A stretch of 63,941 nucleotides of DNA, filler included, from Octopus bimaculoides (lineage: Eukaryota): the NCBI RefSeq assembly GCF_001194135.2. It is 7 parts of 7 records of this genome, joined end to end, with 100 filler letters (N's around TTAATTAATTAA, not from the genome) between each part and the next. Parts side by side here need not be neighbours in the genome. Positions count along the whole stretch, not along the records: positions 17,396 to 24,390 come from NC_068994.1; 6 more parts are not named here. The stretch is one strand, 5' to 3'. A program made the translations under genes and the position numbers. Position 1 is the stretch's first letter. Every line of letters starts with the position of its first letter. The notes under the pieces are model-generated. The model worked only from the letters and a program-made list of their open reading frames with translations. It searched no databases and had not been told where the DNA came from. This document shows, piece by piece, positions 17,633-19,652 of this stretch.

Positions 17633-18968
17633 CTGTACGGGAATATTTATGTATACATATGTGTATGTATGTATGTATGTATGTATGTATGTATGTGTGG
17701 GTGGGTATATATATGTGTCCTCCTCATGTATAATAACAATAATAATTGACTCATTGGTGTGCATGTATAGACATTTGTGCATGTACATTTAAATGCACAT
17801 ATATGTATTTATGTATTTATGTTTATTTGTGTATATCTATATATGTTAAAGTATGCATATATATGTGAGTTTTTACGATTTTTTATATGTTTATATTTGG
17901 ATATTTTAAATTAACTTCATGAACTTTATAAAAAAATCTCTGAAGAGACCTAGAGAATCATCCATATACCTCTATTTCATCCATTTCATCTATCAATTAC
18001 TTTAGCCTACTGGAGTTATATAGATAGAATGAGGNNNNNNNNNNNNNNNNNNNNNNNNNNNNNNNNNNNNNNNNNNNNNNNNNNNNNNNNNNNNNNNNNN
18101 NNNNNNNNNNNNNNNNNNNNNNNNNNNNNNNNNNNNNNNNNNNNNNNNNNNNNNNNNNNNNNNNNNNNNNNNNNNNNNNNNNNNNNNNNNNNNNNNNNNN
18201 NNNNNNNNNNNNNNNNNNNNNNNNNNNNNNNNNNNNNNNNNNNNNNNNNNNNNNNNNNNNNNNNNNNNNNNNNNNNNNNNNNNNNNNNNNNNNNNNNNNN
18301 NNNNNNNNNNNNNNNNNNNNNNNNNNNNNNNNNNNNNNNNNNNNNNNNNNNNNNNNNNNNNNNNNNNNNNNNNNNNNNNNNNNNNNNNNNNNNNNNNNNN
18401 NNNNNNNNNNNNNNNNNNNNNNNNNNNNNNNNNNNNNNNNNNNNNNNNNNNNNNNNNNNNNNNNNNNNNNNNNNNNNNNNNNNNNNNNNNNNNNNNNNNN
18501 NNNNNNNNNNNNNNNNNNNNNNNNNNNNNNNNNNNNNNNNNNNNNNNNNNNNNNNNNNNNNNNNNNNNNNNNNNNNNNNNNNNNNNNNNNNNNNNNNNNN
18601 NNNNNNNNNNNNNNNNNNNNNNNNNNNNNNNNNNNNNNNNNNNNNNNNNNNNNNNNNNNNNNNNNNNNNNNNNNNNNNNNNNNNNNNNNNNNNNNNNNNN
18701 NNNNNNNNNNNNNNNNNNNNNNNNNNNNNNNNNNNNNNNNNNNNNNNNNNNNNNNNNNNNNNNNNNNNNNNNNNNNNNNNNNNNNNNNNNNNNNNNNNNN
18801 NNNNNNNNAAGGAGAATTACAAATGTCACTAAATGTGACTAAGGTGTTAGAAAACACCTACATTGCTAGAAATAAGAGCTAAAATGCTCTAATGTTGTAG
18901 TTAACACACATGAATGAAAACATATACTAACAGGGACCATAATCGTTCGAAAAATACCGATCGAGAAT

Positions 18969-19021
18969 GCTTCATACTGATGCGTCAGTTTCGGCAATTT
19001 CCGTCCCCTCATCAGTTAAGC
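18969..19021 (-). ncRNA. Type I hammerhead ribozyme, intact core
   Basis: GCUUAA CUGAUGA GGGGA-CGGAAA-UUGCC GAAA CUGACGCAUCAG UA/UGAAGC. One mismatch in each stem. Predicted cleavage between 18975 and 18974. Confidence 0.8.
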
Positions 19022-19364
19022 CAGCTCCGCTCGGCTCTTTCCGGACTCGCTTCGCCATTAGTATTTATGCTTTCGTCATACGAATAATTGGATGATTCAG
19101 CGATTTGCTAATGTATATATATAAAATTAATATGAACAGCAGTTTGGAATGTTACACCAAAAAGGAGAATTACAAATGTCACTAAATGTGACTAAGGTGT
19201 TAGAAAACACCTACATTGCTAGAAATAAGAGCTAAACTCTCTAATGATGTTCATATTAATTTTATGTATACACATTAGCGAATCGCCAAATAATCCAATT
19301 ATTTGGATGACGAAAACATAATACTAATGGCGAAGCGAGTCCAGAAGGAGCCAAAGCTGAGCTG

Positions 19365-19417
19365 GCTTAACTGATGGGATGACAGAAATTGCCGAAACTG
19401 ATGCATCAGTATTAAGC
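19365..19417 (+). ncRNA. Type I hammerhead ribozyme, A9G variant
   Basis: GCUUAA CUGAUGG GAUGA-CAGAAA-UUGCC GAAA CUGAUGCAUCAG UA/UUAAGC. Perfect stem I and a perfectly palindromic stem III (ACUGAUGCAUCAGU). Confidence 0.75.
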
Positions 19418-19613
19418 ATTCTCGATCGGCACTTTTCGGGTTATTATGGTCCCTGTTAGTGTATATGTTTTCATTCATGTACGTTAACTACAGAATTAAA
19501 GGGTTTTAGCTCTTATTTCTAGCAATGTAGGTGTTTTCTAACATCCTAGTCGCATTTAGTGACATTTCTAATTCTCCTTTCTGGTGAAACATTGCAAACT
19601 GCTGTTCATATTG

Positions 19614-19652
<39 letters not shown>

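What the first reader, a model, noticed from the sequence alone, without database searches (positions are those of the whole stretch)
18809..19618. 353-nt tandem/inverted repeat built around a type I hammerhead ribozyme: candidate cephalopod retrozyme
Seen: a 353-bp monomer is repeated head-to-tail (18811 recurs at 19164) and then inverted (19249-19603, plus a 15-nt start of a further unit). Both complete copies contain a 53-nt fold: stem I GCUUAA/UUAAGC, core CUGAUGA...GAAA, stem II GGUGA/UUGCC by two-copy consensus, palindromic stem III ACUGAUGCAUCAGU and a GUA cleavage triplet. The minus copy keeps every core base, while the plus copy has A9G. Established: tandem non-coding monomers of a few hundred nt with type I hammerheads and palindromic stem III characterise metazoan non-LTR retrozymes and Penelope pseudo-LTRs, which self-cleave (often as dimers) and can circularise. 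Inference: this family could yield a 353-nt circular RNA copied by a Penelope RT. I cannot tell whether it is already catalogued for cephalopods.
Basis: partly seen in the sequence, partly recalled or inferred. Interest (0 to 1): 0.85.

Follow-up and report, generated by a model that had tools for sequence, protein, structure and literature searches.

The report
Decayed hammerhead-ribozyme repeat (retrozyme-like), octopus-type DNA
A 353-base non-coding repeat, present as two diverged head-to-head copies on a gap-flanked contig, carries a real but degenerate type I hammerhead ribozyme motif and looks like a relic of the known animal "retrozyme"/Penelope-derived repeat class, so it is a new example of a known kind rather than something new.

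Summary
The repeat and the ribozyme motif are real. An 844-nt contig (18809-19652) between N gaps holds 1.24 units of a 353-nt repeat. It is joined head-to-head to a 1.05-unit inverted copy that is 89% identical. Each full unit has a 53-nt type I hammerhead motif, at 19021->18969 on the minus strand and 19365-19417 on the plus strand.

- **Rfam:** its hammerhead models do not detect either motif.
- **Independent model:** a covariance model built only from four experimentally validated retrozyme hammerheads finds exactly these two sites (18.3 and 15.1 bits). All other sequence scores at most 4.9 bits in the piece and 12.8 bits in 54 kb of controls.
- **Damage:** both copies are degenerate. The minus copy has an intact core but one mismatch each in helices I and II. 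The plus copy has A9G and a helix II mismatch.
- **Retrozyme-like features:** unit size, 37% GC, no coding capacity and a palindromic helix III fit animal non-LTR retrozymes. The partial-tandem plus inverted layout is the classic Penelope-type insertion pattern.

I could not test copy number, covariation, cleavage, circular RNA or a Penelope partner. Verdict: a probable inactive relic and a new member of a known kind.

The parts
18809..19161 (-). Complete 353-nt repeat unit of the left arm. The hammerhead-sense strand is the minus strand. GC is 0.37. The start at 18809 is only the edge of the N gap, not a biological boundary.
   Evidence: (D6, period 353)
19162..19246 (-). Partial next unit of the left arm, which is its 5'-truncated end in the hammerhead sense. 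19162-19236 is 100% identical to 18809-18883. CTCTAATG at 19239-19246 still matches 18887-18894.
18969..19021 (-). Hammerhead motif, copy A. Helix I is 19021-19016/18974-18969 (GCUUAA/UGAAGC, 1 mismatch). Core CUGAUGA is 19015-19009. Helix II is GGGGA-CGGAAA-UUGCC at 19008-18993 (1 G.G mismatch). GAA is 18992-18990. Helix III is ACUGA-CGCA-UCAGU at 18989-18976. A17 is at 18975, and the predicted cleavage is between 18975 and 18974.
   Evidence: 18.3 bits, E~5e-4, full-length match to model R1
19237..19247 (.). Head-to-head junction where the 5' ends of the two arms meet, with 2-5 nt of microhomology (TG/ATGTT).
19245..19599 (+). Right-arm unit (355 nt) in inverted orientation. It is 88.9% identical to the left unit, and the hammerhead-sense strand is the plus strand.
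   Evidence: (I5-I9, D7 spacing 355)
19365..19417 (+). Hammerhead motif, copy B. Helix I is GCUUAA/UUAAGC (perfect). The core is CUGAUGG (A9G) at 19371-19377. Helix II is GAUGA-CAGAAA-UUGCC at 19378-19393 (1 A.C mismatch). GAA is 19394-19396. Helix III is the 14-nt palindrome ACUGAUGCAUCAGU at 19397-19410. A17 is at 19411, and the predicted cleavage is between 19411 and 19412.
   Evidence: 15.1 bits, E~5e-3
19600..19618 (+). Start of a further unit in the right arm, a terminal redundancy with 19245-19263.
   Evidence: (D7, I6)
19619..19652 (.). (TG)17 microsatellite running into the N gap. It is either the insertion target or an expansion of the unit's own alternating TATRTATAYAC tract, so the 3' end of the right arm is not established.

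Best explanation
The island is a relic insertion of a short (~353 nt), non-coding, hammerhead-bearing retroelement. It belongs to the metazoan non-LTR retrozyme class, or equivalently to the non-autonomous Penelope-derived repeats, in an octopus-like genome.

**Inferred life cycle of the family** (from the known class, not shown here)
1. Tandem copies are transcribed.
2. The type I hammerhead cuts after GUA, probably as a double hammerhead formed through the palindromic helix III. This releases unit-length RNA with a 5'-OH and a 2',3'-cyclic phosphate.
3. A host RtcB-type tRNA ligase circularises the RNA.
4. A Penelope-like RT/GIY-YIG enzyme copies it into new sites.

**This locus**
- The layout has two arms whose 5' ends meet and whose 3' ends point outward, one arm being a partial tandem. 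That pattern is expected from Penelope-type priming on both DNA strands.
- Both copies look inactive. Each has two damaging differences in the ribozyme, and no two hammerheads in the same orientation are assembled.
For: **Shown**
- The motif has the correct type I topology and, in copy A, every core base: CUGAUGA, G10.1-C11.1, GAAAC, A15.1-U16.1 and GUA.
- It is not a chance match. There were 0 hits in 40 Mb of random sequence with a descriptor of equal quality.
- Model R1 was built only from the coral, mussel and two axolotl retrozyme hammerheads that were cleavage-tested in PMC7229834. It matches both sites full-length at 18.3 and 15.1 bits. Everything else in the piece scores at most 4.9 bits.
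- In 54 kb of controls the best score was 12.8 bits. Seven control loci pre-selected to contain the same core and helix III scored at most 10.8 bits.
- Helix III is a full palindrome in copy B, as in all four validated retrozyme hammerheads: ACAGUACUGU, ACGCGCGU, ACACGUGU and ACAUGU.
- The predicted homodimer of copy B is a double hammerhead, as for the coral and axolotl Ax353 ribozymes.
- The unit is 353 nt with GC 0.37, within the 150-450 bp and <45-50% GC of the class.
- It has no coding capacity. Open stretches reach at most 62 aa, the two copies differ by frameshifts, and the six-frame query found no protein homologues.
- The circular monomer RNA folds better than shuffles in the hammerhead sense, with z = -2.6 and -2.4.
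- Partial tandem plus an adjacent inverted 5'-truncated copy is the described Penelope insertion architecture (PMC8557442). A Penelope protein cleaves and extends both DNA strands in vitro (PMC11167929). Hammerhead pairs on opposite strands 100-700 bp apart were reported for Schistosoma PLE remnants (PMC4209133).
- Penelope elements are abundant in coleoid genomes (PMC8967140).
Against: - No Rfam hammerhead family (types I, II, III, HH9, HH10) reaches even about 10 bits.
- Neither copy has perfect helices plus an intact core, so neither meets the filter used by the retrozyme authors.
- The hammerhead fold is 9-11 kcal/mol less stable than an alternative hairpin in which core CUGAUG pairs with the 3' strand of helix III. 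Validated ribozymes also fail to fold as the MFE, but only by 2-7 kcal/mol.
- The ribozyme region is no better conserved between the copies (6/53 differences) than the rest of the unit (about 11%). There is no compensatory change.
- Tandem evidence is only 1.2 units, and TRF finds no array.
- No other copy was found by any route.
- No RT or GIY-YIG domain is present in the piece.
- The contig is short and gap-flanked, so fine architecture may be affected by repeat collapse.
Confidence: 0.6

Rival explanations
1. The two arms are 5'-truncated copies of the terminal (pLTR/UTR) region of an autonomous Penelope-like element. They are not an independent short retrozyme family, and the hammerhead is simply the PLE's own.
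For: The head-to-head inverted plus partial-tandem layout is the PLE signature. PLE remnants with hammerheads on opposite strands 100-700 bp apart are known. Retrozymes and pLTRs are homologous in Xenopus. The N gaps (774 and 406 nt) hide the outer ends.
Against: In both diverged arms the end of the unit runs straight into its start, at 19161|19162 and 19579|19580. The repeating period is therefore 353-355 nt, not about 3 kb. No RVT or GIY-YIG match exists in 5.3 kb of flanking sequence. PLE hammerheads are typically minimal, with helix III absent or 1-2 bp and an extra base after A9. Here helix III is 5-7 bp.
Confidence: 0.15
2. This is an ordinary satellite or dispersed repeat whose hammerhead-like shape is coincidental. 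It would be built around a 13-nt inverted repeat (GCUUAACUGAUG ... CAUCAGU-A-UUAAGC) and was never catalytic.
For: Rfam finds nothing. The predicted MFE is that hairpin, not the hammerhead. The two copies are one evolutionary observation. A loose descriptor hits shuffled sequence 0.11 times per piece. There is no extra conservation or covariation in the motif.
Against: A descriptor of the observed quality gave 0 hits in 40 Mb. The independent model R1 separates the two sites from all background, including decoys that have the same core and helix III. GAAAC, G10.1-C11.1, a helix II in the right place and a non-G at position 17 are not required by a simple hairpin.
Confidence: 0.1
3. The ribozyme-bearing repeat is real, but the tandem and inverted arrangement is an assembly product. 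It would result from collapse or mis-joining of dispersed or tandem copies on a short contig placed between gaps.
For: The 844-nt contig is bounded by N runs. The 75-nt tandem overlap is 100% identical while the arms differ by 11%. If all parts were equally old, P is about 1.6e-4 (my calculation). That pattern is what a collapsed tandem array gives. PMC8557442 notes that such structures cause short-read assembly problems.
Against: An artefactual foldback would give identical arms, but these differ by 11% with indels. The junction has only 2-5 nt of microhomology, too short for a k-mer mis-join. A collapsed array would still mean the locus is tandem.
Confidence: 0.1
4. The present-day consequence of the locus is a long hairpin RNA. 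Read-through transcription of the two arms would give a ~300-bp double-stranded RNA that feeds small-RNA silencing of the family. The ribozymes themselves would be irrelevant.
For: The island RNA is predicted to form 305 inter-arm base pairs at -488 kcal/mol. Plant-type long miRNA-precursor models match it purely as a hairpin.
Against: There are no expression or small-RNA data. Any inverted repeat would give this prediction, and the Rfam scores are far below gathering thresholds (78.7 vs 230 bits).
Confidence: 0.05

Closest known systems
Metazoan non-LTR retrozymes (Cervera & de la Pena 2020, PMC7229834), e.g. mussel Mg353, coral Amil224, axolotl Ax353/Ax330
   Same: - Short non-coding unit. 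At 353 nt and 37% GC it has by coincidence exactly the length and GC of mussel Mg353.
- Head-to-tail repetition.
- A type I hammerhead with a 6-bp helix I, the CUGAUGA/GAAAC/GUA core and a fully palindromic helix III.
- Dimer-competent geometry.
- A structured monomer RNA.
- A model trained on these ribozymes recognises both sites.
   Different: - No sequence homology outside the core.
- Helix III is much longer (5-7 bp, a 14-nt palindrome, against 6-10 nt).
- Helix II is longer and mismatched.
- Both copies are damaged.
- Only 1.2 units are contiguous.
- The arms are inverted head-to-head, which is not described for retrozymes.
- Expression, cleavage and circularity are untested.
Penelope-like element insertions and their pLTR hammerheads (PMC4209133, PMC8557442, PMC11167929)
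   Same: - A partial tandem plus an adjacent inverted 5'-truncated copy.
- A type I hammerhead with palindromic helix III positions.
- A possible microsatellite at the 3' end.
- PLEs are present in coleoid genomes.
   Different: - No RT/GIY-YIG ORF.
- A period of 353 nt instead of ~3 kb.
- PLE hammerheads are 'minimal', with helix III absent or 1-2 bp and an unpaired base between A9 and 10.1. This motif has a long helix III and no such base.
Rfam Hammerhead_1 (RF00163) hits already annotated in cephalopods (235 in Architeuthis dux, PMC6962438)
   Same: A type I hammerhead in a cephalopod-type genome.
   Different: This motif does not reach even ~10 bits with any Rfam hammerhead model. It is therefore not one of the canonical hits that such annotation would list.
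Schistosome hammerhead-bearing satellite/SINE-like repeats (Sm-alpha and W-elements; Ferbeyre et al. 1998 as cited in PMC8490949)
   Same: A repeat of ~330-350 nt, AT-rich, non-coding, tandem or dispersed, carrying a type I hammerhead (unit size from my own knowledge; hammerhead function from PMC8490949).
   Different: The schistosome ribozymes are canonical, with loop-loop contacts, and are experimentally active. I have no evidence of either here.

Membership tests
Hammerhead ribozyme, type I | Conserved catalytic centre CUGANGA / GAAAY / RUH, with the open end at helix I | tested here: met
   Copy A has CUGAUGA, GAAAC and GUA with the correct order and topology. Copy B fails at one position (CUGAUGG, A9G).
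Hammerhead ribozyme, type I | Three helices with perfect pairing around the core (the filter used in PMC7229834, suppl. fig. S1 legend) | tested here: not met
   Copy A has an A.G mismatch in helix I and a G.G mismatch in helix II. Copy B has an A.C mismatch in helix II. Helix III is perfect in both.
Hammerhead ribozyme, type I | Recognition by curated covariance models (Rfam hammerhead clan) | tested here: not met
   No hammerhead family was listed at E<=10 on 6995, 845 or 81 nt.
Hammerhead ribozyme, type I | Recognition by a model built from experimentally validated retrozyme hammerheads | tested here: met
   Model R1 (4 seeds) scored 18.3 bits (E~5e-4) and 15.1 bits (E~5e-3), both full-length. 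Background was at most 4.9 bits in the piece and at most 12.8 bits in 54 kb of controls. E-values are rough and the seed set is small.
Hammerhead ribozyme, type I | Site-specific self-cleavage | not testable with these tools
   The predicted hammerhead fold is 9-11 kcal/mol above the MFE, against 2-7 for validated ones. That is suggestive only.
Hammerhead ribozyme, type I | Covariation in helices across family members | tested here: inconclusive
   Only two copies are available, with no compensatory double change. No further copies were retrievable.
Metazoan non-LTR retrozyme | Tandem repeats of a 150-450 bp unit (dimers to multimers), each with a type I hammerhead | tested here: inconclusive
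   The period is 353-355 nt in both arms, but only 1.24 and 1.05 units are assembled, with one hammerhead per arm and gaps on both sides.
Metazoan non-LTR retrozyme | Low GC (<45-50%) and no protein-coding capacity | tested here: met
   GC is 0.37. Open stretches reach at most 62 aa, are not conserved between copies, and have no homologues.
Metazoan non-LTR retrozyme | Multicopy family in the genome | not testable with these tools
   No eukaryotic genome collection was on hand. The unit is absent from the one 29-kb Octopus vulgaris stretch fetched.
Metazoan non-LTR retrozyme | Expressed as unit-length linear and circular RNA | not testable with these tools
   No transcriptome access. The circular monomer is predicted to be more structured than shuffles, with z about -2.5.
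Penelope-like element (autonomous) / pLTR | RT plus GIY-YIG ORF flanked by the repeat | tested here: not met
   A six-frame Pfam scan of all non-N sequence outside the island found only Mos1-type HTH_48. Gaps prevent exclusion.
Penelope-like element (autonomous) / pLTR | Partial tandem plus an adjacent inverted 5'-truncated copy | tested here: met
   The 5' ends of the arms meet at 19237-19247, and the left arm is a partial tandem. The description of the architecture is in PMC8557442.
Penelope-like element (autonomous) / pLTR | Minimal hammerhead (helix III absent or 1-2 bp, unpaired base after A9) | tested here: not met
   Helix III is 5-7 bp and there is no extra base between A9 and G10.1.

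The most novel reading that the evidence does not exclude
An octopod-lineage retrozyme family exists whose hammerhead has an unusually long (14-nt) palindromic helix III. The 3' strand of that helix can alternatively sequester the catalytic core, giving a built-in monomer-off/dimer-on switch. Its genomic insertions show the full Penelope signature in miniature (partial tandem, head-to-head inverted copy, microsatellite end). That would be direct structural evidence that Penelope-type priming on both strands mobilises retrozymes.
Probability: 0.12. Interest if true: 0.55.

Novelty: new member of a known kind. Interest (0 to 1): 0.33.

Why it matters
If a genome-wide analysis confirms the family, it would add cephalopods to the animals known to carry retrozyme-type, ribozyme-processed repeats, and so potentially abundant small circular RNAs. 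I found no paper in the searchable library describing a cephalopod retrozyme.

The head-to-head, partial-tandem layout could link retrozymes mechanistically to Penelope-like integration. Reviews state that no retrozyme sequence feature points to the mobilising element (PMC7761336). The link is so far phylogenetic and rests on Xenopus (bioRxiv 10.64898/2026.07.22.740005).

On its own, this locus is a degenerate relic on a poor-quality contig and changes nothing yet.

Tried and rejected
1. **Rfam scans** at three scales found no hammerhead. The long-miRNA hits (MIR7533 and others) are just the inverted repeat, and the mir-297-type hits at 17650-17850 are microsatellite.
2. **Finding other copies through the protein database.** I concatenated all 21 stop-to-stop stretches of at least 24 aa from six frames into one query. 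It gave 6884 word candidates and none at E<=1e-3.
3. **Exact-pattern DNA scans.** The repeat-specific 24- and 25-mers gave 0 hits in viral and metagenome contigs. A hammerhead pattern with the same helix III gave 0 viral hits and 7 metagenome hits. All 7 lack helices I and II, so they are chance matches, and I kept them as decoy controls.
4. **Looking up the window's own ORFs** to find the source contig. They are not on record.
5. **One 29-kb Octopus vulgaris locus.** It contains the mariner relative but no copy of the unit.
6. **Using 'the hammerhead is not the MFE fold' as a disproof.** I rejected this after calibration, because validated retrozyme hammerheads are not MFE folds either.
7. 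**Inferring ancestral states from CpG decay.** I rejected this because CpG is not depleted (obs/exp 1.22 and 0.88) and the CpG-type changes split 4:3 between the copies.
8. **Homology to mussel Mg353**, which has the same length and GC. There is none.
9. **Two-sequence RNAalifold** gave no double compensatory changes and is not informative.
10. **tRNA/SINE origin.** ARAGORN found no tRNA.
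Full report
**What is in the sequence.** The finding lies on an 844-nt block (18809-19652, GC 0.37) bounded by N runs at 18035-18808 and 19653-20058.
- 18809-18883 recurs exactly at 19162-19236, a period of 353 (family D6). The match continues weakly to about 19246.
- From 19245 the sequence is the reverse complement of the same unit. 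19245-19579 aligns to 18809-19141 at 88.9% identity over 332 nt with three small indels. 19580-19618 then matches the reverse complement of 19123-19161 (I6).
- The right arm is therefore 1.05 units with a 355-nt period (D7).
- (TG)17 follows at 19619-19652 and runs into the gap.
- In the ribozyme-sense orientation the left arm reads on the minus strand and the right arm on the plus strand. Their 5' ends meet at 19237-19247 with 2-5 nt of microhomology, and their 3' ends point outward.
- TRF does not report a 353-nt array because fewer than two units are contiguous.

**The hammerhead motif.** Both full units carry a 53-nt type I hammerhead-shaped motif. I placed it base by base and recovered it with a descriptor search on both strands.
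- Copy A (minus strand, 19021->18969) reads GCUUAA CUGAUGA GGGGA-CGGAAA-UUGCC GAA ACUGA-CGCA-UCAGU A UGAAGC. Every core position is canonical. Helix I has one A.G mismatch and helix II one G.G mismatch.
- Copy B (plus strand, 19365-19417) reads GCUUAA CUGAUGG GAUGA-CAGAAA-UUGCC GAA ACUGA-UGCA-UCAGU A UUAAGC. Helix I is perfect, A9 is G, and helix II has one A.C mismatch.
- The perfect stem I and the 14-nt palindrome hold for copy B only.

**Is it chance?**
- A loose descriptor finds 0.11 core-intact hits per dinucleotide-shuffled piece, so a loose match alone would mean little.
- A descriptor set to the observed quality requires a 6-bp helix I and a 5-bp helix II with at most one mismatch each, a perfect 5-bp helix III, GAAA and UH. 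It found the two real sites and nothing in 40 Mb of Markov-1 random sequence.
- My analytic estimate (inference) is about 5e-10 per position. That gives about 5e-6 for this piece and only a handful of chance hits in a whole 2-3 Gb genome.

**Curated and independent models.**
- Rfam lists no hammerhead family at E<=10, whether I give it 6995, 845 or only 81 nt. What it does list are hairpin or microsatellite artefacts.
- I took the four retrozyme sequences that Cervera and de la Pena cleaved in vitro from the supplement of PMC7229834: coral Amil224, mussel Mg353, and axolotl Ax353 and Ax330. I aligned their hammerheads and built a covariance model from them alone.
- With filters off, that model's two best matches in the 7-kb piece are exactly 18969-19021 (minus; 18.3 bits, E about 5e-4) and 19365-19417 (plus; 15.1 bits, E about 5e-3). 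Both are full-length, and the next hit scores 4.9 bits.
- In 54 kb of other DNA the maximum was 12.8 bits. Seven metagenome loci I had fished out because they contain the same core and the same helix III scored at most 10.8 bits.
- The model has only four seeds and a shortened calibration, so the E-values are rough. The separation from background is nevertheless clear.

**Folding.**
- As monomers, both copies are predicted to prefer a hairpin in which core CUGAUG pairs with CAUCAG of helix III. The hammerhead fold scores -3.9 and -2.0 kcal/mol against MFEs of -14.9 and -11.4.
- I first read this as evidence against the motif. Calibration showed that the validated coral, mussel and axolotl ribozymes are also not MFE folds, by 3.6, 7.4 and 2.3 kcal/mol. 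The argument is therefore weak, although the penalty here is larger.
- All four validated ribozymes have a fully palindromic helix III, which is the basis of the double-hammerhead mechanism (PMC4209133). Copy B shares this feature.
- The predicted homodimer of copy B is a double hammerhead with a 14-bp intermolecular helix III, as for the coral and Ax353 ribozymes.
- The circular 353-nt monomer folds better than shuffles in the ribozyme sense, with z = -2.6 and -2.4.

**No selection signal.**
- The two copies differ at 6 of 53 ribozyme positions, the same rate as the rest of the unit.
- Of the four differences in the core or helices, each copy carries two damaging states.
- There is no compensatory change, and with two sequences no ancestral state can be assigned.
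- CpG is not depleted, so CpG decay gives no polarity either.

**Context.**
- The unit has no coding capacity. The longest open stretches are 57-62 aa, the two copies differ by frameshifts, and a six-frame query found no homologue among 5.8 billion proteins.
- A six-frame Pfam scan of all other non-N sequence in the piece found only Mos1-type HTH_48 domains. There is no reverse transcriptase or GIY-YIG.
- The mariner fragment at 20059-20679 is 88% identical over 621 nt to an Octopus vulgaris chromosome, OX597816.1. An octopod-like source is therefore plausible but not proven.
- Penelope elements are among the abundant shared repeats of coleoids (PMC8967140).
- The giant squid genome paper already lists 235 Rfam Hammerhead_1 hits (PMC6962438).

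**Interpretation.**
- The unit meets the descriptive criteria of metazoan non-LTR retrozymes: unit size, low GC, no ORF, a type I hammerhead with a palindromic helix III, and head-to-tail repetition (PMC7229834; the definition is).
- The layout is the architecture described for Penelope-like insertions: a partial tandem plus an adjacent inverted copy with 5' ends facing (PMC8557442). It matches the in vitro finding that a Penelope protein nicks and extends both strands (PMC11167929).
- Because the end of the unit runs into its start in both diverged arms, the repeating entity is about 353 nt, not a ~3-kb coding element.
- I therefore favour a relic of a short non-autonomous hammerhead element over a fragment of an autonomous Penelope element. 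Recent work treats those two as related in any case.
- Both copies are probably inactive today, and no cleavage-to-cleavage monomer is encoded in the assembled sequence.

**Unexplained points and caveats.**
- The 75-nt tandem overlap is 100% identical while the arms differ by 11%. If all parts were equally old, P is about 1.6e-4 (my calculation). The likeliest reasons are collapse of a longer tandem array during short-read assembly, or arms templated by different family members.
- The (TG)17 may be the target microsatellite. It may instead be an expansion of the unit's own TATRTATAYAC tract, which sits at exactly that position in the other copies. The 3' end of the right arm is therefore not established.
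- I could not retrieve any further copy of the family. Copy number, consensus and covariation remain open, and these are the decisive tests.

**Verdict.** This is a new member of a known kind, of modest interest. It would become more interesting only if a genome-wide analysis shows an active family or a consistent Penelope-type insertion signature.

Noticed in passing
window 20059-20680 (+): Decayed mariner/Mos1-type transposase fragment (HTH_48, frameshifted). It is 80-82% aa identical to database proteins including an Octopus vulgaris 'hypothetical predicted protein', and 88% nt identical over 621 nt to O. vulgaris chromosome OX597816.1 (L008 18598-19205).
   Followed up: yes
window 23469-23700 (+): Second mariner-type N-terminal fragment (HTH_48, E 2e-9) inside a 159-aa ORF. 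The rest of the ORF has no family match.
   Followed up: partly
window 19016-19009 and 18991-18984 (minus strand); 19369-19376 and 19395-19402 (plus strand): The 8-mer AACUGAUG occurs twice in each ribozyme, once as helix I end plus core and once as A13-A14 plus the helix III 5' strand. CAUCAG can therefore pair with either copy. This gives a core-sequestering alternative hairpin that might act as an on/off switch or might be accidental.
   Followed up: partly
window 18809-18883 vs 19162-19236: The tandem overlap is 100% identical although the two arms differ by 11%. This suggests collapse of a longer tandem array in the assembly, or arms of different origin.
   Followed up: partly
window 18809-19161: Unit length (353 nt) and GC (0.37) are identical to those of the validated mussel retrozyme Mg353. 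There is no sequence similarity outside the ribozyme core, so this is apparently coincidence.
   Followed up: yes
window 22391-22458: Perfect 34-nt tandem duplication (AACTTCACTCACTTCACACAACGTAACGACACAC x2).
   Followed up: no
window 22896-23283: The '191-194-nt perfect palindrome' listed by the repeat finder is an artefact of the N run at 22906-23267, not real sequence.
   Followed up: yes
window 17396-17430, 17650-17870, 21190-21250, 23268-23295, 24180-24310: Dense microsatellites: (TA)n, (ATGT)n, (GA/GAAA)n and (GATA)n with (GACA) interruptions. They produce spurious Rfam microRNA hits (mir-297, mir-1277, mir-3149) far below gathering scores.
   Followed up: partly
window 20823-21329 (-): A 168-aa ORF rich in His, Ser, Leu and Thr runs over low-complexity DNA. 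It has no family match and is not on record as a called gene, so it is probably not a gene.
   Followed up: partly
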